NCBI RefSeq assembly: GCF_032444005.1
Contig: NC_091286.1
Coordinates: 51,150,001 to 51,214,000 of the forward strand
Reading direction: 5' to 3'
Origin: Ranitomeya imitator
Lineage: Eukaryota
DNA: 64,000 nt
In this document: piece after piece, positions 2,718 through 63,999 of the stretch
Position numbering within the stretch: position 1 is the first letter of the stretch
How the letters are laid out: each line of letters starts with the position of its first letter
Notes under the pieces: model-generated
The model's database searches: none
Seen by the model: only the letters and a program-made list of their open reading frames with translations
Told to the model about the DNA's origin: nothing
Program-made: the position numbers and the translations under genes

Positions 2718-4254
2718 GATCAATGCATTAAGCCTTAAAAATCCCCCAGGTTTACCAAACTGTAGTGGAGGATTGGTACAATTCTACATCTGAAGCTTGT
2801 CAAGGATAGTTTTACTTCTTGGAGCTATTTTAATTAAATCCATTCAAGTCATCAGTTGAGAGTCACCAGTTAAGAATTGGTGGTGCCAGCAAGATATTCT
2901 TTTTCGTTTGTCTATTTTCACAGATTTTCTTTATATTTTTTCAAGCTTGAAATGATTATGAATTAAGATCAGATTAATAACTGTAAAGCATTTATAATTA
3001 TTGAGGTGGTTACTAACTCTGAAAATTCTTTTCTTGCATGTTATTTTCTTTAGGAGGATAAAGGAGAAAGTAAAAGGTTTTTACATCTATTTCTAGCAAT
3101 ACTTTATGTAGTGGTTTCCCAATTTAGTAGAGCCGGATTAAAGATTGTGCCAAAAAAAATAAATGAATAAATGCCTTGGTTCCTAAACTACCACAACAAA
3201 TGGGATTCAAATTTGTATCTGCAGGTTCATGACATAAAGTGCCCAACACATCATCAGCCCCGGTAAGTAGCCAGTGCCCAGGTTGCAATATTATAATGAG
3301 AATAGATTAGGAAACTGTCTGTCTTGGTGAGCTGGTTGTGATCTCAATATCTGGTTAGGCCAACTAGGTAGCACGAGCTGGATCTAGTGCCCTCTTACTG
3401 CCAATCTACTGAGGGATGTTGTTTTTTTCTATTTTAGCTAAAAGTATATTTTTTCATGCAGTTTGTTGTCCATTGAGAATTGTCTTCTTTTAAATTCAGA
3501 GCTGATATAGTACCGCTGTGATGTCTAAATCAAAGTTATTATCCTGTATATTAAGTTATGCTTTTATAGACAGGCTTTTTACCTAAATGTTTCTTATCTT
3601 TTCTCAATGTATCTGTACCCTAGGTTGATGATTCAAAATAAGTGAAATATTTGTCAGTAATAGAAGACATTTTGCTCATGAAGGCCTGAAGAGCAGTACA
3701 ACACTAAGTGTTTGCAGGCAACAGTGAATCATGGTGGAAGTTTCCCGCAAGTTTTGGGCTGCATGTTAGCAAATGGAAATGCAGATACCACTGATGCATA
3801 TCAGTGCACCCTATTCATAGGGAAAACACCCTATGTTGGACATAAACAATAATAGGGACCAACTCCACTATGACATAAATCCTATAGAAAAACTACGGAG
3901 TATAAAAGAACCCAATATACGTAACAATCTATAAAATATACCAAATTTTATTAAATCACATAATTGATAACAGATAATACATACAAGGGACACGTATAGC
4001 ACAAGTACGGCGGACAACTAACACTGTACATAACACCTTGGTCATAGAAGGAACAGAAATAAAGTGGCTAAGAGAGGCATATTAATTCTTAGTTCAATTG
4101 CTAATAAAGTGCATAGTGCGCCTACAAAGTAAATTCAACCTCCTACCACCATATCTGTTGATATCAGACAGACTTGCAATAAGTGAATATAAAAGTAACC
4201 AAAGTTCTGCCAGTCTTACCCAGTAAATAGATGGTGCCAGTGAGTGTCCGGTGG

Positions 4255-4290
4255 CCCCGACGCGCGTTTCGCGTGAGCTTCCTCGGGGGG
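4255..4290 (-). ncRNA. Minimal hammerhead motif, U4C core variant, GUC site
   Basis: CCCC-CCGAGGA-A-GC-UCAC-GC-GAAAC-GCGC-GUC-GGGG; self-complementary ACGCGCGU helix III. Confidence 0.6.
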
Positions 4291-4563
4291 TCATGTTTGT
4301 GTGCTTAACTGGAGCAGTATTTAAGGACATCTAAACAGCTGTGATGAGTAGTCTGCACAGTAATTGGCGCATGCGCACCGCCATATTATGGGACGCTGTC
4401 CACATCATCCCCGACATTTCCGGCGTATGGAGCAGGCAGAGGGAAAACCCCCTCCAGACGTCCCATAATATGGCGGTGCGCATGCGCCAATTACTGTGCG
4501 GACTACTCATCACAGCTGTTTAGATGTCCTTAAATACTGCTCCAGTTAAGCACACAAACATGA

Positions 4564-4599
4564 CCCCCCGAGGAAGCTCACGCGAAACGCGCGTTGGGG
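4564..4599 (+). ncRNA. Minimal hammerhead motif, mirror copy with GUU at the cleavage triplet
   Basis: CCCC-CCGAGGA-A-GC-UCAC-GC-GAAAC-GCGC-GUU-GGGG; same as 4255-4290 except C17>U. Confidence 0.55.
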
Positions 4600-6116
4600 C
4601 CACCGGACACTCACTGGCACCATCTATTTACTGGGTAAGACTGGCAGAACTTTGGTTACTTTTATATTCACTTATTGCAAGTCTGTCTGATATCAACGGA
4701 TATGGTGGTAGGAGGTTGAATTTACTTTGTAGGTGCACTATGCACTTTATTAGCAATTGAACTAAGAATTAATATGCCTCTCTTAGCCACTTTATTTCTG
4801 TTCCTTCTATGCCCAAGGTATTATGTACAGTGTTAGTTGTCCGCCGTACTTGTGCTATACGTGTCCCTTGTATGTATTATCTGTTATCAATTATGTGAAT
4901 TATTAAAATTTGGTATATTTTATAGACTGTTACGTATATTGGGTTCTTTTATACTCCGTAGTTTTTCTATAGGATTTATGTTAGCAAATGGAGTTGGGGA
5001 CTTGGTCTGGATTAATATTTTCCTCAATGCTGATAATTACAGACAGATACTTATCTTTCATGCAGTGCCATTGGAGAGACATCTGACTGGTTCAAATGTA
5101 TTCTACAGCAGGACAACAACCCCAACTATACAGCCAGTGTCATTAACCCCTTAGTGACCGCCAATATGTGCCCTGTTGCACCCTCTGTGACTGCGATAGT
5201 TACACCCCTGCATGTGACTCGTAAGTCAATCAGTAATCTCGACAGTCAGGCGACTGAAAGGACATTTATACTTATCCAAGCCTGGTCCTGCCACAGAACA
5301 TTGTAGTAGGTGTGCTAGAGTGGGAGAGCAACAGAGAGGTAGGTAAAAGACCTCTTTATTTTATTGCAATCCTCTCTGTCCACCGATCCCTTCTTTCTGG
5401 TGGAAAATCCCTTTAATGAACATATGACTTAGGTTAGTCACCAACACTCATATCAGCCATTTCCTTTTTTTTTATTTTGCAGTCTTTTGAATATTCTTAC
5501 TCTGCATTTTCCCTTTGAGAATGATAAGGTAAATTCACAGAGTGAAAAAAAACATCCTCCTGAAGCTGTAAAAATTATATCACAACAGATGCATCCTGTA
5601 TTGAGTAAAAAAACCATCCATGCATTTAAATCACTTCTATTCTGTTGGTTTATGATGCTGTTTGAGACAACACTGTTTTTGCATTTGTAATTAGAAGATT
5701 GAGCAGATGGTGGAGTTCTCATTTGTGATAGGTCTATTAAAATAACTTATGCAGACAAAAACTTGTGTATTACAGATTACCTGCTTTCCATTCTGCGATA
5801 AATTGATAGATTGGAATACATTTTGGGGGAATTATTTAACACTGACTTTAAACAAAAAAATAATGCTAGCTATTGCATGCTCTGTACTAATTTATAAAGA
5901 AATATGTCTCATCAAACTGTTTTAGCATAAAAAATGTAAGTAATAAACAGTTGTTTGGACTGCAATTTATTTAGTATGGACGGATAGTACTTTTCTTATA
6001 TAACTTTTCTTGAAGGGGTTATATAAAGTTAGAAAACAGGTATGCTTCCTTACTGAAACAGCACCAATCTTGTCCATAGGCTGAATCTTGTTACTGTAAG
6101 AGTTACAAACATTTAA

Positions 6117-9668: not shown

Positions 9669-10620
9669 TAGGGTTGAGCGAAATGGGTCGGCCATTTTCA
9701 GAAGTCGCCGACTTTTGGCAAAGTCGGGTTTCATGAAACCCGACCCGACCCCTGTGTGGGGTCGGCCATGAAGTCGGCGATCTTCTGAATCTGGTATCAG
9801 AATTCCGATCCCGAGATCCGATATGTTTGCAATATCGGAAATCGGTATCGGAATCCATATTTAAGTGTAAAATAAAGAATTAAAATAAAAAATATTGCTA
9901 TACTCACCCTCTGACGCGCCCTGGTATTAACCGGCAGCCTTTCTTCCTTCGAATCAGCGCTTGCAGGACCTTGCGGTGACGTCGCGGCTTGTGATTGGTC
10001 ACGTGACCGCCCATGTGACCGCTCGCGCGACCAATCACAAGCCGCGACGTCACCGCAAGGTCCTGGAAGCGCTGATTCTTAGGAAGGAAGGCTGCCGGAA
10101 AGAAGCAGGACGTGTCCAAGGGCGAGTATATACGTAATAGGAATATACTCACCCTCGGACGCGCCCTGCTTCTTTCCGGCAGACTTCCTTCCTAAGAATC
10201 AGCGCTTCCAGGACCTTGCGGTGATGTCGCGGCTTGTGATTGGTCACGCGAGCGGTCACATGGGCGGTAGCGCGACCAATCACAAGCCGCAACGTCACCG
10301 CAAGGTCCTGCAAGCGCTGATTCGAAGGACGGAAGGTTCCCGGTTAGTACCAGGGCGCGTCCGAGGATGAGTATAGCGATATTTTTTATTTTAATTCTTT
10401 ATTTTACACTTAAATATGGATCGCAGGGCCTGAAGGAGAGTTTCCTCTCCTTCAGACCCTGGGAAACATTGGAAACCCAATGCACTGCATTGGGTTTCGA
10501 GTTTCGGCCGACCCCGACTTTTTTATAGGATCGGCCGATTTCACTCGACCCGACTTTTGAAAAAGTCAGGTTTCGTGAAACCCGACCCCATCCTATAAAA
10601 GTAAAAGTCGCTCAACCCTA
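9669..10620. mobile_element. Non-autonomous hAT element
   Basis: TIR TAGGGTTGAGCGA / TCGCTCAACCCTA, perfect 8-bp TSD ATGTTTAT (9661-9668, 10621-10628), nested internal palindromes. Confidence 0.9.
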
Positions 10621-11269: not shown

Positions 11270-13798
11270 GTTAGCTTAGTTACATAGTCATCCCATGGAG
11301 CCCAGATGCAATTGAACAAATCAAGTTGATTATTAATACAGGCCGTAAGATTCTCCATATGTCTCATTTCTTTAATCTTCATCTGGAGTTTTGTCATAGT
11401 GGGAGCTGATCTTTTCTTCCACTAATAGACACTTCGCCGATGTTAGGATATGGAGGAGCAGCCTGGTAGGGCCCTTTGTCATGGGCACGGGGGGAACATT
11501 AAGCAAAAAAGTCACAGGATCCAGAGGAATCTCTACATCTAACACCTGAGAAATCAACCCCTGTACTCTCTTCCAGAATGGGGATATAGTCTGGCAATCC
11601 CAGAATATATGTGGCAATGAGCCCACAGCCCCCGGGCATCTCCAGCATTTATCCGACGTGGCAGGGTAAATATTATGTAAAACCTCCGGCATCAGTATCT
11701 TGTACTGATTTTCCTTTTGTGTTATGCATGGTGACGATTTAGCTGCCTTAGACCATATGACCTGCCAGATAGGAAGCGGAAGTTCCCTTCACAGGTATCT
11801 CTCCCACTTTATCATGTAAGCATGCTTAGGAGGGGGGTCTGATGGCGGAGTGAACAGTATACTATAAATGTCCGTGATCAAACTCTTTGTAGAGGGATTC
11901 CCTTTACAGAGTCGCTTAAAGGGAGTGGGGGTGGAGAACGTTGTGTTTTTATGTAAAGTTAAGGCCAGATGGCGGATTTGTAAATATGAGTAGTAGGTCC
12001 TAAGTGGGAGTTTAAACCGCTCTCTAAGAGTCTGAAAAGGAAGAATATTTCTATTAAAGGGGTCTACAATATCAGAGTAATAAAATAATTGTGCTTGAAG
12101 CCATGGTTCTGTCGTAGCTGCTGTAAGACTATCAGGTATGGAGGGTGTAAAAAGGAAGGAGATCAAAGAGGGCTTGGGGATCAATGGAAAGGCCTTGCTG
12201 CTTATCCTCCTAATTTTCATTGAAAATGCCATAGAGCCCAGCAGAGGCATTGAGGGGCATGTACTCCCATCTCCCCATAGCAATCGATTGGAATGCGCTG
12301 GAGCCATCCAAAGTTTCTCGATTTCTACCCATTTGTTATAAGCCCGCAAGGAGGCCCAAGCTGGTATCCTTCTAAGGTGCATGGCCAAGTAATATCTCCA
12401 GATGTCTGGAAGGGCAATACCCCCTGCGTTTATGTGAGGACTGATTTAGATATTCGATGTCGTCTCTGACCCCCCAAAAAATTAAGAAGCACAGTCTGAA
12501 ACCTCCTCAACACCGCTCGTGCGATTGGCACCGGCAAAACCTCCACCATGCATAAGAACATAGGTATAATAGACATCTTTATCGCATTTGCTCTGCCAAA
12601 AAGTGAGAGAGGAAGTTTAGACCATCTAGAAAGTAACCCATTAAACTCTTGAAAGAAGGCTTGGAAATTATGTCTATAAAGGGAGTCATAAGAGCTGGTC
12701 AGGAAAATACCCAAATAAGGAAAATACCCAAATATTTAATTTAGGTGTCCTTCCAAGCAAATTTAAACTTTGATTTCAGAGCGTCCATCATTGCGCATGG
12801 TAAGTTAATTGGGAGAGCTTCAGTCTTTGTTGTATTTACCTTATAACCTGAGAGTAGTCCATATTATATCAAGGTAGATTGAAGATTGGGGAGGTAAATG
12901 TGTGGGTTGGTGAGGGTGAAGAGAATATCATCTGCAAATAGAGACAACTTGAACTATCTCTCCCGTACCATAATGCCCTGGATATCTGGATTATTCAATG
13001 GGGTTGAAGTGCTACTTAAAGAAAGCCTGTCCCTTTCTGTCACTTGAATTTGGAGGGAACAATCTTCAGCCATGGAGGCGGGGATTTGGGTTTTTGATTC
13101 ACCCTTTCCTTACCCGCTGGCTGCATGCTGGCTGCAATATTGGATTGAAGTTCATTCTCTGTCCTCCGTAGTACATGCCTGCACAAGGTAATCTTGCCTT
13201 GCGCAGGCGTGTACTATGGAGGGCAGAGAATGAACTTCAATCCAATATTGCAGCCAGCATGCAGCCAGTGGGTAAGGAAAGGGTGAATCAAAATCCCCAA
13301 ACCCCCGCCTCCATGGCTGAAGATTGTTCCCTCCAAATTCAGGTGACAGTGTCCCTTTAATGCTGAAAAAATCAAATTAAAATCACCCCCCAAATATAGC
13401 GCATGTGATGGGGTTTTACGCAATTTAGCTAATACCCGATTTAGGAAAAGTAACTGTCCAGAATTGGGGACATATACGTTACATAGTATCACAGGGACTC
13501 CCTTCAAAGTTCCCGTTAGGATCAAGTATCGTCCATTAGGGTCTGAGTCCAAGCTAATAACCTGGAAAGGGCAATTTTGAGCTATCATAATCGCCACTCC
13601 CGCTTTTTTCCTATTTTGGGTGGCTGTATATACAATTGGGAATCTTCCCCTAACAAAGTTGAAGGATCCTGTTTCATCATGGTGTGTCTCCTGCAGAAGC
13701 ACAATATCTGCCTTTGAAGACTTCAATTCTCATAGAAGGAGCTGTCTCTTAACATCCGAGTTGAGCCTCTTAACATTTAATGACATGAGACGCACCAT
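11270..13798 (-). pseudogene. L1 ORF2 remnant (APE endonuclease, C-terminal RT, CCHC region)
   Basis: MVRLMSLNV..ADIVLLQETH..DPNGRYLIL..NVYVPN..GGDFN; FKLSLFADDIL; YLGI; CWRC..SLPHIFWDC. Stops and frameshifts; RT N-terminal motifs absent. End coordinate approximate. Confidence 0.85.
13020..13356. mobile_element. Palindromic Kolobok/T2-type MITE inserted in L1 ORF2
   Basis: TTAA at 13016-13019 and 13357-13360; almost the whole element is one hairpin centred near 13190. Confidence 0.8.
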
Positions 13799-16236: not shown

Positions 16237-16914
16237 ATATGGAGCTCCTGATTCAATATGGATATTCAAAAACACTTAACCTACTGATGTCTCAATCAAT
16301 TTTAATTTTATTGGTATCTGTTTTTATTTTTGAAATTTACCAGTAGCTGCTGCATTTCCCACCCTAGGCTTATTCTTGAGTCAATAAGTTTTCCCATTTT
16401 TTGTGGCAAAATTAGGGGTCTCGGCTTATACTCGGGTCAGTATTTATATATCTATATTAAATGTGGTCGTCTGGTATTTTAAGAACATTGCCTTAAAGAA
16501 TGTAATGTTATAAATTAGCATAACTCACTTTATAAATACCACTCTGCCACCACAACAGATACATCATTCATGTGATGGCTGCTGACAATCACTGGTCACA
16601 AAGGTGATACATGAAGGTACAGCATGTGACCAGTGTAACCAGTGATTGGTTGCTGAAGACATGTGAATGGTTTTTAATGACATCACTTTGGGACTGTCAG
16701 GAACTAGAAGAGCTATGGGAGATTTAAAATGTGAATTATGTTTGGGGATATGTTATATTTTTTTGTTATTTTATCACATTTGCTGCTCTTAGGCAACTAC
16801 CAGTTTTCCTAAAATCCTAGACAACTCCATTAATTTCTCACATTTTGACATTCCACTACTGTCTGGACCAAATCTATCTATATCGAGCTCAAAAGATGTT
16901 CATATTACAGGTAG

Positions 16915-17334
16915 GTATTGGAGAAACAAATGGGTTATTTCTGTGCTGCCATGTAGAAAGGATAAAGGACGCCAATCTGAGTACAAGTGGTTTAATTGTC
17001 AGCACGTTTCAAAGTATACAACTTCTTCTTCAGGTAGTGGTTGCCCTGAAGAAGTTGTATACTTCGAAATGCATTGACGATTAAACCACTTATCCTAGGT
17101 TATCCTAGGATTGGCAGCCTTTGTCCTTTCTACAGGGCAGTACAGAATTAACCCATTTGTTCCTCCACTACCTACACTTTCATCTCCTCGTGGGTCTGGA
17201 GGAGCCTCAAGCTTTCTCAGTGGTTGTGTGCACAGAACACGACCAGATGAGCACAATTGTGCAATTCTTTTAACTTGGTTACCCAGATTAGACCCTATTT
17301 AGCGTTTTGTCTTTCTCCAGTCTTTTCTCCGTCA
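16915..17334. mobile_element. Second, smaller ORF-less palindromic element with two decayed hammerhead motifs
   Basis: Inverted arms ~16911-17034 and 17045-17175, 10-bp spacer, ~160-bp tail, 14-bp TSD CATAT(T/C)ACAGGTAG (16901-16914, 17335-17348); both arms start at CCTGAAGAAG...GAAA. Confidence 0.75.
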
Positions 17335-18465
17335 CATATCACAGGTAGCACAGAGCAACAGGAAGCAAAGCTGATGCATTTTTGAGGCTAGAAATGCAAA
17401 TCAATGTTAATACTATATATACAGATTTGTCTGAAATATCACCCACTAGTGTAGAAAAGTTGATTTTGTCACTAAGCTTCGTATGAACATCTTTATGATC
17501 CATATAGCAATGGCCCACTCATAAAATGACACACTCAGCTCTGCAACTCTATATTTCTACAACAATGTTGAGTTTTCATATCCTCGTAAAAGAATAAAAT
17601 TAATCTTGGATCAATTTTCTTCTATAGGTAATTTTAATGAATATAAATGTGCTTTCATTAATGTTCTGATGATGCAATTAATCAAATTAATCAATTTTGT
17701 GAGCATCTAATGGACTTATAGTGAACTGTTATCACTATTATCCTCTAAACCATAAATTTCCTGAATGGCATTAGCCATCCTGGTAACATTAATATCTTTA
17801 TCTTATCTTATAGCTTTCTTAAGTTGATGGGTATGAGAGATATGTCTTTTTTGTAGAAAATCTCTCTGCTTTAAAATTGTCCTGCATTTATTTTAGTTAC
17901 TACAAGAAAAGACTTCTCTGAGACTTGAAAGATCCCCTCCACTAGCATCAGAAATAGACTCCATTTCGATCTGTCACTAAAAGTGGAAATAAATGTTCAT
18001 CATATTGAAATAGTCTTCTTCAGTATCAGTGTTACTTTACATTACCTTGGATTAGTTCATCACTTGACCAGCAACCTACGGTTGGGCTAAACAACCTCAA
18101 AAGCTGCCCATAGACATTAGCCTAAGGACTCATTAATGTCAGCCGAATAGGCTGATTTTGATGGTCTTAGCCTGGCCACATAATGCATAAAAGGGTTTCA
18201 CAACTAATGGTAGATATTTCAAGGAAAAGAATCAGGCAGTTGGATTTCAACATATCCAATCCTTAATTTTTCAAAAGAGATAAGCTGCCACCAAATGAGT
18301 CTAGTAGCAGTGTTGTCTCCTCTTTGCATATAGATATGAGTTTCGTGTTTCTAGGATGGTCCTTGGAAAATGCCTAAAATTCATAAACCTTCAAAAAACA
18401 CATTTAAAAAAAGTAATTGATGGACATTTTACGATCAAATTATGCAGACTCCAATCAAACATTAG

Positions 18466-19544: not shown

Positions 19545-20655
19545 TTAAAGAGGGAGTGCCACACTCACTTGAGTGAAATGGAATCGGACCAAGCAGCACT
19601 AATGCGTCATCTGTCAGCAAAAAAAAACTTTTCTGACTCTTCTATTGTCTTCAGCACTAGTTTTAGTATTTTGTTTCATCTTTTCACATCTACCCATAAA
19701 TGAAAAGTAATATATATTTATTTCATAATGTCATAATTTGATAGATATATTAGAATAAGATTTCACAGCAGTATATTAGCTCTTTTTCTGTTCTACTGAA
19801 AGTCATCAGGTGAAGCACAGAGATCAGTGACATACCACTGTGCCATGCAAGTGTAGAAAAGTTCTATAAAAGAACAGAGCTTTGATAACAAAGAAGAATA
19901 ACTGCACGGTAATTAAAAAGAGAGAACAGGTCACAATTATTTTTATAATATAGATGAATATTTAATACTAAGGGCATGTTCACATGTGATGGAAAAAGTT
20001 ATGGAAGCTCAACAAAATCCTGGTTCTTGCATGGATTTCACCCTTTGCATTTCAATGGGTGAAATTCATAATTAAAATACACTGAAAGAATTTAGATGCT
20101 ACAGATCTGCAGCACAAGTCAATTTTCCAATGGAAACAATTTTACCAGAATTAATTTCATTCACTTTGCTGTTCCCATAATTTACTTTTTGAATTCCCCT
20201 CCATAAATTGAGATGCCCAATATGCGACATGAGCTTGCCCTAACAGTTTAAATAGTTTTTAATACAGGTGAATATTACTGCACACAAAAGCAATGTGTCC
20301 ATTAAGGGTTGAAGAAAAGTGAAGGATGACTGGTAGGCAGAGTAGGCAGCAATGAAGTGTGGCATTAAGAGGGAAGGATAATATCTGGAAATAGTAACAA
20401 TTGTTCATCCCTCTTTTTCTATAATATGTATGGGACTTTGTATTTGAAATGCTGATAATGATCTTGGTGTACAAGCTTTTTCTTTAATGGTGAAGCAATA
20501 GTAGGATGAGCAAAAGAACTGCTCATATTAAAGGAAACCAGAAGGCTGATAATGGCTGAAACATGCTGCCCGACCCATGGCATGTCAGGCATGTAACACT
20601 CCATAAAGCAAAACATTACCATTTAGACCTCAATCTCTTACATAATATCTTATGC

Positions 20656-20699
20656 TTTGCACTGAAGAGGGGCACTCCCCCTAAACATGTGTCTGCAAA
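20656..20699 (+). ncRNA. Hammerhead motif with G12 mutated (probably inactive)
   Basis: UUUGCA-CUGAAGA-GGGG-CACU-CCCC-C-UAAAC-AUGU-GUC-UGCAAA: 6-bp helix I, 4-bp stem II, GUC site, GAAA>UAAA. Confidence 0.6.
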
Positions 20700-20830
20700 T
20701 TGAGATTTTCTTTTGGCTTTAATACTACGTTAGGTGGCAAGGCTTGTTAAAGGGTTGATATTGACTTTTAATATTGTTATTTCCAACAGTTGGTTCTAGA
20801 GATCCAGTCTTCTTCCTCATTAAAGAGAAT

Positions 20831-20838
20831 ATTTGCAT
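20831..20838 (+). promoter_or_regulatory. Octamer motif ATTTGCAT inside the HHR tandem unit
   Basis: Exact match; function is only inferred. Confidence 0.35.
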
Positions 20839-20874
20839 ATTTAATTTCCCGGATGAGCGTTGCACAGTCTATAA

Positions 20875-21236
20875 GTCTACAAGATTTCTACCGCACATCC
20901 CTTCTACTTTGAAACTCTCTACCCCAAGATATCAGACTCTCGCCTATCGTGGAATCAATCAAAAGGAACCTGAAGATCTACCTCTTCCAACAAGCCTACA
21001 ACCTGCAGTAACCACCAAACTGCTGTACGACCAGCTCTACCCTCATCTACTGTATCATCTCCCATCCCTTGTAGATTGTGAGCCCTCGCAGGCAGGGTCC
21101 TCGCTCCTTCTGTACCAGTCGTGACTTGCATTGTTTAAGATAACTGTACTTATTTTTATTACGTACACCCCTCCTCACATGTACAGTGCCATGGATTAAA
21201 TGGCGCTATAATAATAAATAATAATAATAATAATAA
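20875..21236 (+). mobile_element. 5'-truncated L2 LINE 3' end
   Basis: Encodes LQDFYRTSLLL*NSLPQDIRLSPIVESIKRNLKIYLFQQAYNLQ*; L2-type 3' UTR (TAGATTGTGAGCCC..GGCAGGG..TGTACAGTGC..GGCGCTATA) and (TAA)n tail. Confidence 0.8.
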
Positions 21237-23727
21237 GCCTCTTTACCTTGCCATGTCAAGCATGTCAATCACTATAAGGAGAAACATTACCTCTGAGACC
21301 CTAGTCAGAGGCCTATCATACAGCCATATCAGATCTCATGTTTTGTGTTGAGGAGAGGAAACAACCCCAAAACACATGATTCTGGTTTGGCTTTTATCCT
21401 AAGTCATGTGGCAAAGGGTTGATATTGACTTTTAGTGTTGCTGATTACAATAGCTAGTGCTGAAGTTAAGTCTTCTTCCTCTCTAAAGAAACAGTGCAGA
21501 GTTTCAGACTCAAACATACATGGTTAAATCATACAGCCAGAGTCTCATACACGTTGCTTGTGGATCTGGAAAAATCAGCTGTAAAATTCTCTTTAAGGAG
21601 GAAAATATATAAAACAAAGGATTAAAAAGAAATGCATTCACTTTCTGGTGCCTAAACCTAGCCACTAAAAGATTCAATCAAGTCACTATATTTGCTTTGG
21701 AAGCTTCATTTAGAACCTCTGTCACCGATCCGGATAAAACTGATGGGCGTCATGATGGATCCTTACTATAATGGGGTATGATGGGTACAGCTTGTGTGTG
21801 GCATAATACCACCACCGTTAACTTCTGAGAATTTCACCCTTGTTAGTTTCATTCTTACTTTTACGCCTTTTTTTTGTGATACGTTCTCTTCAAAACTGAT
21901 CCAGTACAATGTTGTAAGATAAGCCGGTATTTATTTTATACCAAAAAACGTGTATACTTTTCAGTGCAATAATATTGATCTTGTGCTCTACATAAAAGAA
22001 AACATCTTGCTCAGTAGAGTTACACAAGGATAGGGCAGGAGAATGTGGAAATGATATTTTGATGGCACACATGATCAAGTGCTTAAAGACAACAGACCTG
22101 CTCTTTATGATTTAGTACAGATTAATAAGTGTATTCAAGAGCCCTTTATGACATTTTGAAATTGAGAAATCTTTTGGAGAGGACAGGAAGAGCTCAATTT
22201 TCTGATCTGTTCCTCATATTGTAATTTGAAATGCCAGACTATTATTCTCAAGGACAGGCCCTTGTGGACCACCTGAAGTTTTCTCACTCAGTTTTACTCC
22301 TGAAATAATATACAGTAGTCTGTTTCCAATTTGGCTTACTGTTATAAAAGTTAAGTTTGTCTTTTTCTTTTTTTGTGTCCTGATTGTAAGATGAAAGGGT
22401 TTCCTGCTTATTATTAGCATTATAATAATGTCAGTGAGAATAAAATTAATTATGATTTGTAAAACCACTTTTCCTGGATTCCCAAAATTTTACTAATTGA
22501 AGTGGGTCCCAGGATTTTTACAAAGCGAAAAGAACATGGAATATATCAGGGATGCATATCGAGACAATCTTTAGACTCTCGAAAATAATAATTACATTCC
22601 ATAAAATATTACCAGTATAGCAGCCTGCAGCTGTGGAAACTTACCAAAAGCATCATCGAAAAGCATTGGGTTGTAGGTCTCTACTAGAGATGAGGGATCT
22701 GATAAAATGTGAATTTACCGAATCATGCACATTTGATTGTGCTACTTGAATGTTCCTTATTATTCTATAGAGTTTCTCTAGATCCTGAAATATAATAAAT
22801 GTAAGATGTAAGAAGAGTGAAAAAAATATACCTCACCGCTCACTCATGTCTACTGTCCCATCCCCCGCAACCCTGTCGCGCCACATCTCCGGCCATGTGT
22901 TCACTCTAGACCACGGCTTTGGGCCACAAACAGGCCTCTGAGTTCACTTTGCATGTCAAGTGAACACCTGGGACTCCTTGAGCAGTTTTGAAATTTCTTT
23001 ACAGAGAACCTGACAGCTGATTCATGCTCCCTGATCCACGGGCAGCACGTATCAAACATTGGCTGTATGATTTCAGAACGCACCAGGCTGAGATCATGCA
23101 GCCATTGCCGGGCACATGCTGCTCGTGGATCGGGCAGCATCGCCTGTCAGGTTTCTTTTAAGAAACTTTGAACCATTTTATTTCCAAGGAAGCATGTGGG
23201 TACATTGTGGCTTTAGACAAGCATTCCTTAAGCTTTGATTCTGGGATCATTTTTTAAAACCTTAGTAGGGGCTATAGACAAAAATCACACAAGAAATGTT
23301 CTCTCCCTCTCTTTTAATTAAAAACTACATTTATCGGCATAAAATAGAACCACAATAAAAGAAAAAAATAACAACAAGAAAGACAAAAGAGGAATCCAGT
23401 GGTGTATGACCAGGGTATAGGAGTATGAGAATGCCCAACTTTTATGCAGAAAAAACACAATGTTATGGAAAAAAGGTATATCCCACAAGGTATGTTATGG
23501 GAAAATATGGGTTTGGAAGTTATAAATACAAGAAAGCAAGAATACCTCTTCATGTAAGCTTAAATACACAAGAACTGCCCCATAGACTATCACTTGTAAA
23601 GCTGGTGTCTGAATGAGCCCTAGGATAGCATTCACACATTGAGTGTTTTGGTGAGTTGTTTACATCAGTACCTGTCAGCCAAAACCACGAGTGGAACAAT
23701 CAGAGGAAACATGTGCACCTTTCCTTA

Positions 23728-45275: not shown

Positions 45276-45938
45276 ATGGAGAAATCACCAACCACACAAC
45301 TGAAGAACCGATATCAAATCTTTGTAGAGGATGAAGATGGCACACCTAAGAATGAAGCAATACCAGCAAGCAAAAAAGAAAAGGGCACACAGCAACAAGT
45401 GACAGCAAAAAGTACAGCCAAGAAGCAACGAAGAGTGGTGGTGGTGGGAGACTCACTACTGAGAGGCACAGAAGCAGCCATCTGCAGACCGGACATAACT
45501 GCAAGAGAAGTATGCTGCCTTCCAGGTGCGATGATCAAGGATGTGACCGATAGGATACCAAAGCTCTTCAGCTCCAAGGACGTCCACCCATTTCTTCTGA
45601 TACATGTTGGCACCAATGACACGGCAAGGAAGGACCTACCGACAATCTGCAAGGACTTTGAAGAGTTGGGGAAGAAAGTAAAGGAACTGGATGCACAGGT
45701 AGTTTTTTCTTCTATCCTTCCAGTAGATGGGCATGGCACCAGGAGATGGAACAGGATCCTTGATGCAAACAACTGGCTAAGACGATGGTGCAGACAACAA
45801 GGATTTGGATTCCTGGACCACAGTGTGAATTACTGGTATGATGGACTCCTCGCCAGAGACGGACTACACCTCAACAAACCTGGGAAACACACATTCGCCA
45901 GAAGACTCGCTACACTCATCAGGAGGGCGTTAAACTAG
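45276..45938 (+). CDS. CR1 ORF1 C-terminal part, SGNH/GDSL esterase domain (5'-truncated)
   Basis: VVVVGDSLLRG, IHVGTND, DGLHLN motifs. Confidence 0.85.
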   Translation: MEKSPTTQLKNRYQIFVEDEDGTPKNEAIPASKKEKGTQQQVTAKSTAKKQRRVVVVGDSLLRGTEAAICRPDITAREVCCLPGAMIKDVTDRIPKLFSSKDVHPFLLIHVGTNDTARKDLPTICKDFEELGKKVKELDAQVVFSSILPVDGHGTRRWNRILDANNWLRRWCRQQGFGFLDHSVNYWYDGLLARDGLHLNKPGKHTFARRLATLIRRALN

Positions 45939-46075
45939 AAGAAGAGGGGACGGGAAGAAAAACATTAGACTCGAACAAAGACGACCCAGGAAAACATACT
46001 CAGAAGGGAGGTAAGAACATTTCTAAAACAATCCACAGTGAGGAGATTGGAACAAAACAAAATCCTCTAAACTGC

Positions 46076-48856
46076 ATGCTCGCAAACGCCAGAAGCCTGA
46101 CAAACAAGATGGAAGAACTAGAAGCAGAAATATCTACAGGTAACTTTGACATAGTGGGAATAACCGAGACATGGTTAGATGAAAGCTATGACTGGGCAGT
46201 TAACTTACAGGGTTACAGTCTGTTTAGAAAGGATCGTAAAAATCGGAGAGGAGGAGGGGTTTGTCTCTATGTAAAGTCTTGTCTAAAGTCCACTTTAAGG
46301 GAGGATATTAGCGAAGGGAATGAGGATGTCGAGTCCATATGGGTTGAAATTCATGGAGGGAAAAATGGTAACAAAATTCTCATTGGGGTCTGTTACAAAC
46401 CCCCAAATATAACAGAAAGCATGGAAAGTCTACTTCTAAAGCAGATAGATGAAGCTGCAACCCATAATGAGGTCCTGGTTATGGGGGACTTTAACTACCC
46501 GGATATTAACTGGGAAACAGAAACCTGTGAAACCCATAAAGGCAACAGGTTTCTGCTAATAACCAAGAAAAATTATCTTTCACAATTGGTGCAGAATCCA
46601 ACCACAGGAGCAGCACTTTTAGACCTAATACTATCTAATAGACCTGACAGAATAACAAATCTGCAGGTGGTTGGGCATTTAGGAAATAGCGACCACAATA
46701 TTGTGCAGTTTCACCTGTCTTTCACTAGGGGGACTTGTCAGGGAGTCACAAAAACATTGAACTTTAGGAAGGCAAAGTTTGAACAGCTTAGAGATGCCCT
46801 TAATCTGGTAGACTGGGACAATATCCTCAGAAATGAGAATACAGATAATAAATGGGAAATGTTTAAGAACATCCTAAATAGGCAGTGTAAGCGGTTTATA
46901 CCTTGTGGGAATAAAAGGACTGGAAATAGGAAAAACCCAATGTGGCTAAACAAAGAAGTAAGACAGGCAATTAACAGTAAAAAGAAAGCATTTGCACTAC
47001 TAAAGCAGGATGGCACCATTGAAGCTCTAAAAAACTATAGGGAGAAAAATACTTTATCTAAAAAACTAATTAAAGCTGCCAAAAAGGAAACAGAGAAGCA
47101 CATTGCTAAGGAGAGTAAAACTAATCCCAAACTGTTCTTCAACTATATCAATAGTAAAAGAATAAAAACTGAAAATGTAGGCCCCTTAAAAAATAGTGAG
47201 GAAAGAATGGTTGTAGATGACGAGGAAAAAGCTAACATATTAAACACCTTCTTCTCCACGGTATTCACGGTGGAAAATGAAATGCTAGGTGAAATCCCAA
47301 GAAACAATGAAAACCCTATATTAAGAGTCACCAATCTAACCCAAGAAGAGGTGCGAAACCGGCTAAATAAGATTAAAATAGATATTTCTCCGGGTCCGGA
47401 TGGCATACACCCACGAGTACTAAGAGAACTAAGTAATGTAATAGATAAACCATTATTTCTTATTTTTAGTGACTCTATAGCGACAGGGTCTGTTCCGCAG
47501 GACTGGCGCATAGCAAATGTGGTGCCAATATTCAAAAAGGGCTCTAAAAGGGAACCTGGAAATTATAGGCCAGTAAGTCTAACCTCTATTGTTGGTAAAA
47601 TATTTGAAGGGTTTCTGAGGGATGTTATTCTGGATTATCTCAATGAGAATAACTGTTTAACTCCATATCAGCATGGGTTTATGAGAAATCGCTCCTGTCA
47701 AACCAATCTAATCAGTTTTTATGAAGAGGTAAGCTATAGACTGGACCACGGTGAGTCATTGGACGTGGTATATCTCGATTTTTCCAAAGCGTTTGATACC
47801 GTGCCGCACAAGAGGTTGGTACACAAAATGAGAATGCTTGGTCTGGGGGAAAATGTGTGTAAATGGGTTAGTAACTGGCTTAGTGATAGAAAGCAGAGGG
47901 TGGTTATAAATGGTATAGTCTCTAACTGGGTCGCTGTGACCAGTGGGGTACCGCAGGGGTCAGTATTGGGACCTGTTCTCTTCAACATATTCATTAATGA
48001 TCTGGTAGAAGGTTTACACAGTAAAATATCGATATTTGCAGATGATACAAAACTATGTAAAGCAGTTAATACAAGAGAAGATAGTATTCTGCTACAGATG
48101 GATCTGGATAAGTTGGAAACTTGGGCTGAAAGGTGGCAGATGAGGTTTAACAATGATAAATGTAAGGTTATACACATGGGAAGAGGGAATCAATATCACC
48201 ATTACACACTGAACGGGAAACCACTGGGTAAATCTGACAGGGAGAAGGACTTGGGGATCCTAGTTAATGATAAACTTACCTGGAGCAGCCAGTGCCAGGC
48301 AGCAGCTGCCAAGGCAAACAGGATCATGGGGTGCATTAAAAGAGGTCTGGATACACATGATGAGAGCATTATACTGCCTCTGTACAAATCCCTAGTTAGA
48401 CCGCACATGGAGTACTGTGTCCAGTTTTGGGCAACGGTGCTCAGGAAGGATATCATGGAACTAGAGAGAGTACAAAGGAGGGCAACAAAATTAATAAAGG
48501 GGATGGGAGAACTACAATACCCAGATAGATTAGCGAAATTAGGATTATTTAGTCTAGAAAAAAGACGACTGAGGGGCGATCTAATAACCATGTATAAGTA
48601 TATAAGGGGACAATACAAATATCTCACTGAGGATCTGTTTATACCAAGGAAGGTGACGGGCACAAGGGGGCATTCTTTGCGTCTGGAGGAGAGAAGGTTT
48701 TTCCACCAACATAGAAGAGGATTCTTTACTGTTAGGGCAGTGAGAATCTGGAATTGCTTGCCTGAGGAGGTGGTGATGGCGAACTCAGTCGAGGGGTTCA
48801 AGAGAGGCCTGGATGTCTTCCTGGAGCAGAACAATATTGTATCATACAATTATTAG
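46076..48856 (+). CDS. CR1 ORF2: APE endonuclease plus reverse transcriptase, 926 aa uninterrupted
   Basis: NARSL, GITETW, GDFN, DLILSN, SDHN; LDFSKAFD, GVPQGSVLGP, FADD, DLG. The frame stays open upstream into the ORF1 end. Confidence 0.97.
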   Translation: MLANARSLTNKMEELEAEISTGNFDIVGITETWLDESYDWAVNLQGYSLFRKDRKNRRGGGVCLYVKSCLKSTLREDISEGNEDVESIWVEIHGGKNGNKILIGVCYKPPNITESMESLLLKQIDEAATHNEVLVMGDFNYPDINWETETCETHKGNRFLLITKKNYLSQLVQNPTTGAALLDLILSNRPDRITNLQVVGHLGNSDHNIVQFHLSFTRGTCQGVTKTLNFRKAKFEQLRDALNLVDWDNILRNENTDNKWEMFKNILNRQCKRFIPCGNKRTGNRKNPMWLNKEVRQAINSKKKAFALLKQDGTIEALKNYREKNTLSKKLIKAAKKETEKHIAKESKTNPKLFFNYINSKRIKTENVGPLKNSEERMVVDDEEKANILNTFFSTVFTVENEMLGEIPRNNENPILRVTNLTQEEVRNRLNKIKIDISPGPDGIHPRVLRELSNVIDKPLFLIFSDSIATGSVPQDWRIANVVPIFKKGSKREPGNYRPVSLTSIVGKIFEGFLRDVILDYLNENNCLTPYQHGFMRNRSCQTNLISFYEEVSYRLDHGESLDVVYLDFSKAFDTVPHKRLVHKMRMLGLGENVCKWVSNWLSDRKQRVVINGIVSNWVAVTSGVPQGSVLGPVLFNIFINDLVEGLHSKISIFADDTKLCKAVNTREDSILLQMDLDKLETWAERWQMRFNNDKCKVIHMGRGNQYHHYTLNGKPLGKSDREKDLGILVNDKLTWSSQCQAAAAKANRIMGCIKRGLDTHDESIILPLYKSLVRPHMEYCVQFWATVLRKDIMELERVQRRATKLIKGMGELQYPDRLAKLGLFSLEKRRLRGDLITMYKYIRGQYKYLTEDLFIPRKVTGTRGHSLRLEERRFFHQHRRGFFTVRAVRIWNCLPEEVVMANSVEGFKRGLDVFLEQNNIVSYNY

Positions 48857-58999: not shown

Positions 59000-59539
59000 T
59001 AGGGTTGAGCGAAACGGGTCGGCCACTTTTTGGCAAAGTCGGGTTTCATGAAACCCGACCCGACCCCTGTGTGGGGTCGGCCATGAAGTCGGCGATCTTC
59101 TGAATGTGGTATCGGAATTCCGATCCCGATTTCCGATATGTTTGCAATATTGGAAATCAGTATCGGAATCCATATTTAATGTAAAATAAAGAATTAAAAT
59201 AAAAAATATCGCTATACTTACCCTCTAACGCGCCCTGGTACTAACCGGGAACCTTCCTTCCTTCGAATCAGCGCTTCCAGGACCTTGTGGTGACGTCGCG
59301 GTGACGTCGCGGCTTGTGATTGGTCACGCGGCCGCCCATGTGACCGCTCGCGCGACCAATCACAAGCCGCGACGTCACGCAAGGTCCTGCAAGCGCTGAT
59401 TCGAAGGAAGGCTGCCGGAAAGAAGCAGAGCGCGTCCGAGGGTGAGTATATACCTAATAGGAATATACTCACCCTCGGACGCGCCCTGCTTCTTTCCGGC
59501 AGCCTTCCTTCCTATAAAAGTAAAGGTCGCTCAACCCTA
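59000..59539. mobile_element. Non-autonomous hAT element, deletion derivative of 9669-10620
   Basis: Same TIR TAGGGTTGAGCGA; perfect 8-bp TSD GTAATGAT (58992-58999, 59540-59547). Confidence 0.9.
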
Positions 59540-61667: not shown

Positions 61668-62500
61668 TGTTAGGGCTAGCGGAACGCACCGAGTAAATAG
61701 AGATGTTTATTGATATTGGTGCGTTCGCAGCCCGGGGTCCACCGTGCAGGAGTACCTGCTGCTAGCAAACGGCTGCGAGCTATATGGCGGTATAGACTAA
61801 CTCAGTTAATTCACTGAGTAGCCGTGAAAGGAAAGCACTGTGCCCTGTTAGACTCCACAGAGGCACAGGCTAACTGCCCAAACAGAGAGCATTCAGTGGT
61901 CACACAAACACACAAAACTCCTCGCCGGAGGAGCCAGCATTCTAGGGGCATATTTCAGCCGGGTCCCTGAACACACATACATGTGACCACACTGGCGCAA
62001 AGCACATAACATAAGACAATACTAGCACATGGCCGTGCGGTCATGCGCAGTTTATATAGTTGCAGCACAGGAAGCTGCTACTGAAGTTTTTGCCCTTTCA
62101 GGACCTTCCAGAAGGACCAATGGAAAGTGCTGCAGTACCTGAGCATGTTTTGCCCTTTCAGGAACTTCCAGAAGGACCAATGGAATGTACTGCAGCACCT
62201 GAGCATGTGACCGAACATGTGGCCCTCGACCTCCAATGGGAGACCCTGCCCTGGGCATGCTCAGTGTGAGTAAACAAGGACTTAGTCCCAGAGAGGCTCG
62301 CTCGCCGCAGATCAGTGCAGGGTACCATAGGAAAGCCAGAAAAGGCAGTAGTGACCCTATGCACCGAATCAGCCCCAGCGAGACGCTGGGAGCGACGTCT
62401 CCACTGAGCAGAGCCCACTGCGGCCGATACCGAATGGGAGACCGCAGCAGACACGGATCGAGATTTCCCCTGTGCAGCAGAGGAAACGCGACTCCTAACA
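61668..62500 (-). mobile_element. 3' LTR of a Ty3/Gypsy chromovirus (833 bp)
   Basis: TGTTAGG / CCTAACA termini; polypurine tract AGGAGGGGGGGTAA immediately before it on the minus strand; two ~60-bp internal repeats at 62083-62210. Confidence 0.9.
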
Positions 62501-63999
62501 TTACCCCCCCTCCTAGGGCCCCCCTCTCCTTGAGCCTCACTACGCTCAAAAGCTGCGATAAGCAGCAGAGCCCGAATGTGCTCCACAGGCTCCCAGGTTC
62601 TATCCTCTGGGCCGTGACCCTTCCAGTCCACCAGATAAAATTTCTTGCCACGCACCACCTTGCACCCCACAATAGCATTCACCTCAAACTCATCCGTGGA
62701 TGAACCCGATGTCCCAGCAGATGACTCGGAAAACCGGGACAAATGAACGGGCTTTAAGAGGGAAACGTGGAAAGTATCGGTGATACCAAGGCGTGGAGGA
62801 ATAGCCAAACGGTAGACCACAGGGTTGACCTGTTCCAGAACCTTAAACGGGCCAATGTAGCGAGGAGCAAACTTAGTGGACTCAACTCGCAGCCTGATGT
62901 TACGGGCGGAGAGCCACACTAAGTCGCCAGGAGCAAAGACCGGAGCGGGGCGCCGGTGTGTATCAGCCGAAACCCTCATTCTCTCCTTGGAGGCCCGGAT
63001 GGCATCCTGTGTGCAGTCCCAGATGTCAAGTGCCTCCACCGCCCAGTCTGCCACCCTAGAATCGGTGGATGACATGAGCATGGGCACAGGGACACGCGGA
63101 TGCTGGCCGTAATTAAGGAGAAAAGGAGTTTGACCAGTGGAATCGGCTACGGCGTTGTTCAGGGCAAATTGCGCCCAAGGTAGCAAAGATGCCCAGTCAT
63201 CCTGCCTAGCAGAGACGAAATGTCGCAAATATGTCACCAGAGTCTGGTTGGTTCTCTCCACCAACCCATTCGTCTCGGGATGGTATGCAGAGGAGAGGTT
63301 TAACTCTATGCTGAGTAAACGGCAGAGCTCTCTCCAAAACCGAGATGCGAACTGGGGACCCCGATCGCTGACAATCTTATCAGGCATACCATGCAAACGG
63401 AAAACGTGTTTAATAAACAACACCGCCAAGGCCCGTGCTGAGGGTAACCGAGGAAGCGGCACCAAATGCACCATCTTGGAGAAATGGTCGGTGACAACCC
63501 AAATAATGGAGCAGCCACGCGACTTGGGTAGACCCACCACAAAGTCCATCCCGACCATCTCCCAGGGCCTGTCTGCCACCGGTAGAGGGTAAAGCAACCC
63601 AGCAGGCCGTTGCCGAGGAGACCGATTCTGGACGCAAGAAACGCACGCCTGAATATAGTCCTTGACATCTCGGGCCATATGCGGCCACCAGTATGTTCTC
63701 GCCAGAAGCTCAGATGTCCTCTTGGTCCCAAAATGCCCACCCACTCTGGAGGAGTGAGCCCAAGAGAGAACCTCCGGTCGCAAGTTAGCTGGTACGAAAG
63801 TCTTGCCCGGGGGCACAGACTCTAGCGAAACCGGAGCTACAGTTCTCAGGCTCTCAGAAGGGACAATAGGCCGAGGCTCCTCCTCCGATGACACCACGGA
63901 GCGGGAGAGAGCGTCAGCACGAACGTTCTTCTCCCCAGAGAGGAAATGGAGAGTAAAATGGAACCGGGAGAAGAACAGGGACCATCTAGCCTGGCGAGA
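62158..63999 (-). CDS. Gypsy pol 3' part: RNase H end, HHCC-DD35E integrase, GPY/F, chromodomain (runs off the window)
   Basis: RQARWSLFF..KNVRADALSR; H..H..C..C; GMDF..IVSD(35)E; FAPRYIGPF; FEVNAIV..FYLVDWKG..TWEP. No stop in the visible part; frame runs into the LTR. Confidence 0.93.
   Translation of the reverse strand, partial: SRQARWSLFFSRFHFTLHFLSGEKNVRADALSRSVVSSEEEPRPIVPSESLRTVAPVSLESVPPGKTFVPANLRPEVLSWAHSSRVGGHFGTKRTSELLARTYWWPHMARDVKDYIQACVSCVQNRSPRQRPAGLLYPLPVADRPWEMVGMDFVVGLPKSRGCSIIWVVTDHFSKMVHLVPLPRLPSARALAVLFIKHVFRLHGMPDKIVSDRGPQFASRFWRELCRLLSIELNLSSAYHPETNGLVERTNQTLVTYLRHFVSARQDDWASLLPWAQFALNNAVADSTGQTPFLLNYGQHPRVPVPMLMSSTDSRVADWAVEALDIWDCTQDAIRASKERMRVSADTHRRPAPVFAPGDLVWLSARNIRLRVESTKFAPRYIGPFKVLEQVNPVVYRLAIPPRLGITDTFHVSLLKPVHLSRFSESSAGTSGSSTDEFEVNAIVGCKVVRGKKFYLVDWKGHGPEDRTWEPVEHIRALLLIAAFERSEAQGEGGPRRGGNVRSRVSSAAQGKSRSVSAAVSHSVSAAVGSAQWRRRSQRLAGADSVHRVTTAFSGFPMVPCTDLRRASLSGTKSLFTHTEHAQGRVSHWRSRATCSVTCSGAAVHSIGPSGSS

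What the first reader, a model, noticed from the sequence alone, without database searches (positions are those of the whole stretch)
3763..4992. 1.2-kb ORF-less hairpin element carrying two outward-facing hammerhead motifs, bounded by a 15-bp TSD
Seen: 523-bp near-perfect inverted arms, a 63-bp spacer, a 95-bp tail on one arm only, and a clean 15-bp TSD inside a Tc1 relic. Each arm has a TTAAATA TATA-like box upstream of an HHR, so the centre looks like a divergent promoter. One HHR has GUC, the other GUU. Established: PLEs carry HHRs in pseudo-LTRs, which can be inverted and have a 3' tail. Inference: a non-autonomous ribozyme-bearing retroelement reduced to two back-to-back pseudo-LTRs and mobilised in trans by a PLE RT/GIY-YIG protein. 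Any read-through transcript would fold into a ~520-bp dsRNA.
Basis: partly seen in the sequence, partly recalled or inferred. Interest (0 to 1): 0.8.

Follow-up and report, generated by a model that had tools for sequence, protein, structure and literature searches.

The report
Head-to-head Penelope-type hammerhead repeat insertion
This 1.2-kb palindrome in a frog genome is one real, fairly young insertion of a non-coding repeat with a degenerate hammerhead motif, laid down as two mirror-image, front-truncated copies, which is the layout already described for Penelope-like retrotransposons, so it is ordinary.

Summary
The arms are 523 nt long (3873-4395 and 4459-4981) with 9 mismatches and no indel. 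There is a 63-nt spacer, a 95-nt one-sided tail (3778-3872) and a perfect 15-bp TSD inside a Tc1-like relic.

The "hammerhead" matches Rfam type I below threshold (20.5 bits, cut-off 34). Its core reads CCGAGGA (U4C) and helix II has only 2 bp. GUC versus GUU is a CpG C>T change that arose after insertion.

Contigs from public runs of the same species label show that the arm belongs to a multi-copy family:
- Related copies run unbroken from tail into arm and start exactly at 3778.
- Related copies run unbroken from the arm into the first 43 nt of the spacer.

So the spacer is parent sequence, and the fold-back boundary is private to this locus. The tail-less arm ends in a 4-nt overlap (ATGT) with the TSD, which points to internal, microhomology-primed initiation.

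My reading is a single Penelope-type, two-ended insertion of two 5'-truncated copies, not a hairpin-shaped mobile unit. No partner PLE, RNA evidence or coding remnant was found. The architecture is described in the literature, and this scan has noted it repeatedly on other DNA of this genome. Interest is low: a new member of a known kind.

The parts
3763..3777 (.). Left copy of the 15-bp target-site duplication ATGTTAGCAAATGGA
   Evidence: D3, 100% identity. A 1163-nt single-copy contig (depth 8.7) bridges 3650-3814 with 1 difference (table 8).
3778..3872 (-). 95-nt 3' tail, present only on the left copy. It is the canonical 3' end of the repeat family and contains the hairpin CACTGAT-ATGC-ATCAGTG (3789-3806) and a small stem-loop at 3818-3833.
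   Evidence: A multi-copy contig (depth 48) aligns over its whole length to 3778-3936, starting exactly at 3778 and crossing 3872/3873 unbroken.
3873..4395 (-). Left arm: a 523-nt copy whose sense strand is the minus strand (centre to outside)
   Evidence: The orientation follows from the hammerhead motif.
4253..4292 (-). Hammerhead type I-like motif of the left arm. The core reads CCGAGGA (U4C), with a bulged A, a 2-bp helix II, GAAACGCGCGUC with a palindromic helix III, and cleavage triplet GUC (C at 4259).
   Evidence: RF00163, 20.5 bits, GA 34, E 0.079.
4296..4395 (-). GC- and CpG-rich promoter-like segment of the left arm: TATA-like box at 4318-4324, CCAAT at 4363-4367, GCGCATGCGC at 4367-4376, CArG-like box at 4381-4391
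   Evidence: These are motif matches only; function was not tested.
4396..4458 (-). The 'spacer', read here as the 5' extension of the left copy. At least 4396-4438 is colinear with the arm in related copies. The last 20 nt hold a second copy of the AGGG-NGTTTT-CCCT stem-loop (4440-4453).
   Evidence: table 8: four contigs (two per run, one sample) cover 4277-4438 at about 90% identity, depth 41-72..
4459..4977 (+). Right arm: a second copy, sense on the plus strand, truncated at its 5' end at 4459. It lacks the last 95 nt of the family because synthesis began internally.
4563..4602 (+). Hammerhead-like motif of the right arm, with the same core but GUU in place of GUC (T at 4595, a CpG C>T change)
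   Evidence: Rfam does not report it at E up to 10.
4978..4992 (.). Right copy of the TSD. Its first 4 nt (ATGT, 4978-4981) also continue the arm homology, giving a 4-nt microhomology between target and template.

Best explanation
This is one insertion event of a non-coding, hammerhead-bearing repeat family. The family is either the pseudo-LTR/UTR part of a Penelope-like element or a non-autonomous derivative of one. The insertion was made by a Penelope-type (RT + GIY-YIG) machinery acting on both strands of a cut staggered by 15 bp. Inferred steps: the top-strand 3' end primed a cDNA at the family's canonical 3' terminus, giving the left copy (tail + arm + 'spacer', 681 nt). The bottom-strand 3' end (...ACAT-3') annealed to an internal AUGU 95 nt upstream on a second template and primed the right copy (519-523 nt). 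Both cDNAs stopped early (5' truncation) and were joined head to head at 4458/4459. The result is a dead-on-arrival palindrome, not a hairpin-shaped transposon. The template RNA was not cut at its hammerhead, because both copies extend 137 nt or more upstream of the cleavage site. That fits a weakened ribozyme (U4C, 2-bp helix II). After insertion the two copies diverged by 1.7%, largely at CpG sites. Shown: the anatomy, the TSD, the multi-copy family, the colinearity of tail-arm-spacer in relatives, and the microhomology. Inferred: the enzyme, the order of priming and the use of two templates.
For: Anatomy and TSD. The empty site restores a Tc1/Sleeping Beauty-like reading frame, and other copies of the flanking repeat lack the insert (table 5). 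The family is multi-copy: contigs at 85-93% identity have depth 41-72 against 8.7 for the single-copy flank contig (table 8). A multi-copy contig starts exactly at 3778 and crosses the tail/arm border. Four contigs cross the arm/spacer border 4395/4396 unbroken and stop at 4438. A fold-back at 4395 in those copies would force a branch there in a k=31 graph, because the arms are identical over their inner 41 nt. There is a 4-nt overlap, ATGT, at the tail-less junction. A second, unrelated fold-back in the same window (16901-17348) has a 14-nt TSD, a 159-nt one-sided tail and a 4-nt overlap (GTAG) at its tail-less end. The motif is hammerhead-derived: Rfam type I with an exact GAAACGCGCGUC, and the 37-nt core is by far the most repeated part (depth 10,000-29,000) with unlike flanks (tables 2 and 7). 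Four of the 9 arm differences are CpG transitions, including GUC>GUU. Literature: an inverted 5'-truncated copy and a one-sided tail are typical of PLE insertions (PMC8557442); a purified PLE protein cleaves and extends both strands, initiates internally, and does not need hammerhead cleavage (PMC11167929); dual min-hammerheads 100-700 bp apart on opposite strands were ascribed to truncated PLEs, and a bulged base 5' of helix II is usual (PMC4209133); vertebrate retrozymes are related to PLE pLTRs (bioRxiv 10.64898/2026.07.22.740005).
Against: No RT/GIY-YIG gene lies in the window; its only RT is an APE-type LINE at 46076-48856. No sequence link between the arm and any PLE could be tested. The tail is 95 nt, against 30-40 bp in the literature. 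The in vitro work reports initiation without homology to the target, whereas here there is a 4-nt overlap. The contig evidence comes from contigs of essentially one sample (X2 = X3) and may include the individual that was assembled. No contig shown spans the central junction or the right junction. The hammerhead match is below Rfam's gathering score.
Confidence: 0.7

Rival explanations
1. The hairpin itself is a non-autonomous mobile unit: two back-to-back pseudo-LTRs with a divergent promoter, copied as a whole and mobilised in trans by a PLE.
For: The arms carry promoter-like motifs facing outward. The CpG-rich centre has o/e 0.96 over 4253-4601 against 0.53 for the window. Earlier first-reader notes of this scan list many fold-back hammerhead insertions in this genome; these are unchecked.
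Against: Related multi-copy contigs run through the arm/spacer border without a branch, and the tail is colinear with the arm in relatives. The ends are asymmetric: a 95-nt tail on one side only. An outward transcript from either promoter would contain only part of one arm, so it could not regenerate the hairpin. A read-through RNA would be a roughly 520-bp perfect duplex (MFE -1016 kcal/mol), a poor RT template. No RNA holder was listed.
Confidence: 0.08
2. The insertion was made by an APE-type LINE (L1- or CR1/L2-like) through twin priming, and the hammerhead-bearing RNA was merely a passenger template.
For: A 15-bp TSD and microhomology-primed internal initiation are classic for L1 twin priming (own knowledge: Ostertag and Kazazian 2001). 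An apparently intact APE+RT LINE ORF lies in the window.
Against: The element has no poly(A) or microsatellite 3' end; it ends ...GGTATCTGCATT. The two arms are duplicates of the same sequence rather than adjacent segments of one RNA, as twin priming would give. The element has no similarity to anything else in the window, the LINE included. Head-to-head duplicates with a tail are the documented PLE signature (PMC8557442).
Confidence: 0.1
3. Only one copy was inserted, and the second arm arose later by inverted duplication (replication template switch or hairpin-capped break repair), or it is an assembly fold-back artefact.
For: Palindromes are prone to such events, and to long-read chimeras. 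No contig shown spans the centre.
Against: The perfect TSD flanks the whole palindrome and the empty site is restored exactly. The arms differ at 9 sites with a CpG-decay pattern. The right junction shows target microhomology. A second locus in the window has the same architecture. Contigs from independent short-read data match the left junction, and a 153-nt contig with 2 differences covers 4271-4423.
Confidence: 0.05

Closest known systems
Penelope-like element insertions with an inverted 5'-truncated copy and a one-sided 'tail' (Evgen'ev and Arkhipova 2005; Craig et al. 2021, PMC8557442; Frangieh et al. 2024, PMC11167929)
   Same: Head-to-head 5'-truncated copies inside one TSD. The extension is at one end only. 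There is a type I hammerhead-like motif in sense orientation and no poly(A). The published enzyme cleaves and extends both strands and initiates internally.
   Different: No RT/GIY-YIG ORF, nor any coding remnant. The tail is 95 nt instead of 30-40 bp. There is a 4-nt target/template microhomology at the internal start, whereas in vitro initiation was reported without homology. The hammerhead lies about 480 nt from the 3' terminus, against about 90 nt in the anole element.
Non-LTR retrozymes of amphibians and other animals (Cervera and de la Pena 2020; Li, Clavereau and Pollet 2026 preprint, 10.64898/2026.07.22.740005)
   Same: A non-coding, hammerhead-bearing repeat family related in kind to PLE pLTRs. 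The length (at least 661-681 nt) is within the reported 51-972 bp range of consensus units.
   Different: There is no tandem arrangement at this locus, and only one motif per copy. The copy ends are not at the ribozyme cleavage site. The core carries U4C and a 2-bp helix II. No circular RNA evidence exists.
Dual min-hammerheads on opposite strands 100-700 bp apart in Schistosoma and other metazoan genomes (Cervera and de la Pena 2014, PMC4209133)
   Same: Two hammerhead motifs on opposite strands, 336 nt apart. The loop is a palindromic ACGCGCGU that could extend helix III in a dimer. There is a bulged base 5' of helix II.
   Different: Helix II has 2 bp here, whereas PLE min-hammerheads usually have 6-8 bp.
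L1 twin priming inversions
   Same: Both target strands prime cDNA synthesis. The second primer anneals internally by a few bases of microhomology, and the TSD is about 15 bp.
   Different: Twin priming inverts adjacent parts of one RNA and leaves a poly(A). Here the two arms are duplicates of the same sequence and there is no poly(A).

Membership tests
Autonomous Penelope-like element | ORF with PLE-type RT and GIY-YIG endonuclease | tested here: not met
   The longest ORF is 78 aa. It has no Pfam family and no relatives. All three sense frames are full of stops.
PLE-type insertion (truncated or non-autonomous) | Tandem and/or inverted 5'-truncated copies forming pseudo-LTR-like repeats within one TSD | tested here: met
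   matching the description in PMC8557442.
PLE-type insertion (truncated or non-autonomous) | Short extension ('tail') at one end only | tested here: met
   A 95-nt tail at 3778-3872 on the left only, colinear with the arm in relatives. It is longer than the published 30-40 bp.
PLE-type insertion (truncated or non-autonomous) | Sequence homology of the repeat to the pLTR or 3' end of an autonomous PLE of the same genome | not testable with these tools
   There is no PLE in the window and no tool searches this genome. The metagenome pattern scans gave nothing or chance matches.
Hammerhead ribozyme type I (Rfam RF00163) | Covariance-model score at or above the gathering score | tested here: not met
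   20.5 bits against 34. There was no hit at gathering threshold.
Hammerhead ribozyme type I (Rfam RF00163) | Invariant core C3 U4 G5 A6 N7 G8 A9 ... G12 A13 A14 and an NUH cleavage site | tested here: not met
   The core reads C-C-G-A-G-G-A, so U4 is C in both arms. GAAA and GUC/GUU are present.
Hammerhead ribozyme type I (Rfam RF00163) | Self-cleavage | not testable with these tools
   This needs in vitro transcription of monomer and dimer constructs. The copy ends do not coincide with the cleavage site.
Non-LTR retrozyme | Tandem repeats of a non-coding unit, each with a hammerhead | tested here: not met
   There is no direct repeat within the 681-nt copy beyond a 14-17 nt stem-loop, and one motif per copy. 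Whether the source locus is tandem is unknown.
TIR DNA transposon / MITE / foldback element | Symmetric terminal inverted repeats abutting a short TSD of fixed length | tested here: not met
   A 95-nt non-repeated tail sits between the left TSD and the left arm, and the TSD is 15 bp.

The most novel reading that the evidence does not exclude
In this frog, the PLE 'tail' and head-to-head copies may arise because a dimeric RNP loads two templates. On this reading the second target strand primes wherever about 4 nt of microhomology is found, so tail length would vary (95 and 159 nt in the two loci of this window) rather than being fixed by two set initiation sites as in the anole in vitro system. 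A more radical variant, which I rate at about 0.08, is that the hairpin itself propagates as a fold-back retrozyme with a divergent promoter.
Probability: 0.3. Interest if true: 0.4.

Novelty: new member of a known kind. Interest (0 to 1): 0.25.

Why it matters
The locus is a clean, dated natural example of how Penelope-type machinery pastes a non-coding hammerhead repeat into DNA. Both junctions, the TSD and the empty site are readable. The tail-less end shows a 4-nt microhomology, which bears on the open question of how PLEs start reverse transcription and create their tail. It also shows that the template was not processed at its hammerhead. It does not reveal a new class of element. For annotation, such palindromes should be read as single PLE-type insertions and not as hairpin transposons or assembly errors.

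Tried and rejected
- Other copies in the window: none found (blastn).
- RNA evidence: no run listed as holding the stretch is on record as RNA.
- Coding remnant or PLE N-terminus in the 78-aa ORF that overlaps the hammerhead: Pfam found nothing. The phmmer search against 1.84 billion proteins gave one hit. That hit is a spurious ORF through a 58-nt satellite on a metagenome contig and has no DNA similarity to the element. Rejected.
- Exact-pattern scans of metagenome contigs for the hammerhead variant (no hits) and for the promoter-like segment (two 19-nt matches in unrelated contigs). Rejected as chance.
- Pfam on the Tc1-like flank pieces and on the rejoined empty site: nothing. Only a weak PDB match to Sleeping Beauty transposase was found.
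- The 'opposite strands' joint 4018/4754: considered as an alternative fold-back junction. Because the arms are mirror images, it is equally an 81-nt same-strand deletion or duplication in a relative, so I did not use it.
- A tandem-unit or circular template: there is no internal direct repeat within 681 nt, and the two AGGG-NGTTTT-CCCT motifs have unlike flanks.
- The 20580-21488 tandem array and the 16901-17348 fold-back: no Rfam hammerhead match at E up to 10.
- Depth serves only as a rough guide to multi-copy status. The tool warns that it is not a copy number.
Full report
**Observation.** The repeat finder gives inverted arms at 3873-4395 and 4459-4981: 523 nt, 98% complementary, 63 nt apart. 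It also gives an exact 15-nt direct repeat, ATGTTAGCAAATGGA, at 3763-3777 and 4978-4992. A base-by-base comparison finds 9 mismatches and no indel, a 95-nt stretch (3778-3872) between the left TSD and the left arm, and no counterpart on the right. The right arm's last four bases (ATGT) are also the first four of the TSD. The window holds no other copy. The element has no ORF longer than 78 aa.

**The target site.** The flanks read ...VNHGGSFPQVLGCMLANG | VGDLVWINIFLNADNYRQIL... across the empty site. The only solved structure this rejoined peptide matches is Sleeping Beauty transposase, weakly (E 0.068), and the alignment spans the insertion point. Pfam did not recognise it. Many contigs of other copies of this flanking repeat join about 3728-3774 directly to about 4983-5021, so they lack the insert (table 5).

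**The hammerhead.**
- Rfam reports Hammerhead_1 at 4253-4292(-) with 20.5 bits, below the gathering score of 34, and E 0.079 for a 1.6-kb search. Nothing reaches gathering in the window. The right-arm copy is not reported at all.
- The 3' half, GAAACGCGCGUC, matches the family consensus exactly. It occurs only in these two places in the window, against 0.08 expected.
- ACGCGCGU is self-complementary. This is the feature that lets amphibian and PLE hammerheads form an extended helix III as dimers (PMC4209133; duplex energy).
- The 5' box reads CCGAGGA in place of CUGANGA, so U4 is C in both arms. It is followed by a bulged A, which is usual in PLE min-hammerheads (PMC4209133). Helix II has only 2 bp (GC-UCAC-GC).
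- From established knowledge of the hammerhead core, U4 is one of the invariant nucleotides. The motif is therefore hammerhead-derived but probably weak or dead.
- It is not a chance look-alike. The 37-nt core (4254-4290 and 4564-4600) is by far the most repeated part of the stretch in public contigs, at depth 10,000-29,000 against 40-1,400 for the rest. Loose ends on both sides have low consensus agreement (0.36-0.59), so the flanks differ among those contigs (tables 2 and 7). It is thus a module shared with many other repeats of this genome.
- GUC (left) versus GUU (right) is a C>T change at a CpG. Four of the 9 arm differences are CpG transitions, although CpG sites make up about 7% of the arm. 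The arms therefore started alike and decayed in place. At 1.7% divergence the insertion is fairly young; I infer a few million years.

**Is the hairpin a unit, or was it made at insertion?** Only contigs were available, and X2 and X3 are one sample.
- A 1163-nt contig at depth 8.7 covers 3650-3814 with one difference. It confirms the left junction and sets the single-copy depth.
- A 158-nt contig at depth 48 aligns over its whole length to 3778-3936, with 10 differences. It starts exactly at the element's end and crosses the tail/arm border.
- Four 162-nt contigs at depth 41-72 align over their whole length to 4277-4438, with 14-17 differences. They cross the arm/spacer border at 4395/4396 and all stop at 4438 (table 8).
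- The two arms are identical over their inner 41 nt. A fold-back at 4395 would therefore force a branch, and so a contig break, there in a 31-mer graph. The relatives show none.

Tail, arm and at least 43 nt of the spacer are thus one colinear parent sequence of at least 661 nt, present in several near-identical loci. The fold-back boundary is private to this locus. The left copy is simply longer at both ends than the right copy.

**Mechanism.** The sense strand of each copy runs from the centre outwards, as the hammerhead orientation shows. So two 5'-truncated copies meet head to head, each with its 3' end at the target.
- This layout is what Craig et al. describe for PLEs: an inverted 5'-truncated copy next to the element, and a tail at one end only (PMC8557442).
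- Frangieh et al. found that a purified PLE protein cleaves and extends both DNA strands, starts reverse transcription at internal sites (which explains the tail), and does not need hammerhead cleavage (PMC11167929).
- Cervera and de la Pena reported dual min-hammerheads 100-700 bp apart on opposite strands and ascribed them to truncated PLEs (PMC4209133). Here the two cleavage sites are 336 nt apart.
- I infer that the top-strand nick primed at the canonical 3' terminus (3778). The bottom-strand 3' end (...ACAT) annealed to an internal AUGU 95 nt upstream on a second template.
- A second, unrelated and older fold-back in the same window (16901-17348) has a 14-nt TSD with one mismatch, a 159-nt tail on one side, and a 4-nt overlap (GTAG) at its tail-less end. 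Two such overlaps out of two loci argue that they are not accidental.
- Both copies extend 137 nt or more upstream of the ribozyme cleavage site, so the template was not cut there.

**What could not be shown.**
- No PLE gene lies in the window. The RT present belongs to an APE-type LINE, and there is also a Ty3-type integrase.
- No tool searches this genome, so the partner and the sequence upstream of 4438-4458 remain unknown.
- No run listed as holding the stretch is on record as RNA.
- The promoter reading rests on motifs only: TATA-like box, CCAAT, GCGCATGCGC, a CArG-like box, and a CpG o/e of 0.96 over 4253-4601.
- The 78-aa ORF overlapping the hammerhead has no relatives. Its one hit is a satellite artefact.
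- The metagenome pattern scans were blank or gave chance matches.

**Earlier notes of this scan.** They name the genome as a poison frog and list intact PLEs, a 6.4-kb head-to-head PLE palindrome, and many small fold-back hammerhead insertions with 14-16 bp TSDs on other pieces. I used these as leads only. They agree with the present reading, and they mean the scan has seen this kind of structure before on other DNA.

**Verdict.** The ribozyme is degenerate, and GUC/GUU reflects CpG decay. The locus is a new member of a known kind, of low interest apart from the microhomology and long-tail detail.

Noticed in passing
window 16901-17348: A second, older fold-back insertion of unrelated sequence. 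Arms are about 120 nt and about 85% alike. It has a 14-nt TSD (CATATTACAGGTAG / CATATCACAGGTAG), a 159-nt tail on the right side only, and a 4-nt overlap (GTAG) between the tail-less arm and the TSD. No Rfam hammerhead match at E up to 10.
   Followed up: partly
window 3819-3832 and 4440-4453 (minus strand): The stem-loop AGGG-(G/T)GTTTT-CCCT occurs only twice in the 64-kb window, both times in this element: near the 3' end (in the tail) and at the extreme 5' end of the long copy. The outer base pair covaries (T-A versus G-C). It could be an RNP-binding hairpin, a template-switch patch or chance; the pattern was chosen post hoc.
   Followed up: partly
window 4634-4640 and about 4961-4972 (plus strand, mirrored in the left arm): A splice-donor-like TGG|GTAAGA lies 40 nt after the hammerhead, and an acceptor-like TTTTTCTATAG|G lies just before the right arm's end. 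They bracket the AT-rich body of about 335 nt. PLEs are known to retain introns, but this was not tested and such motifs are common by chance.
   Followed up: no
window 45276-48856: An apparently intact LINE. ORF1 carries a GDSL-lipase/esterase domain (220 aa), followed by a 926-aa ORF with an APE endonuclease and RT (Pfam E 3.8e-34 for RVT_1).
   Followed up: partly
window 62158-63897 (minus strand): A 579-aa ORF with a Ty3/gypsy-type integrase, SH3 and chromodomain.
   Followed up: partly
window 9853-10421, 955-1336, 13037-13349, 59403-59511: Four further near-perfect palindromes: arms of 284, 179, about 155 and 54 nt, with gaps of 1-24 nt. My simple search found no long TSD. Two draw spurious microRNA-family hits in Rfam.
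   Followed up: no
joints at window 4037/4230, 4274/4358 and 4290/4361: Related copies of the family carry internal deletions or replacements of about 192, 83 and 70 nt. The roughly 265 nt at the 3' end and the promoter-like part are deeper in contigs than the middle. This would fit 5' truncation plus deletion derivatives of a non-autonomous family.
   Followed up: no
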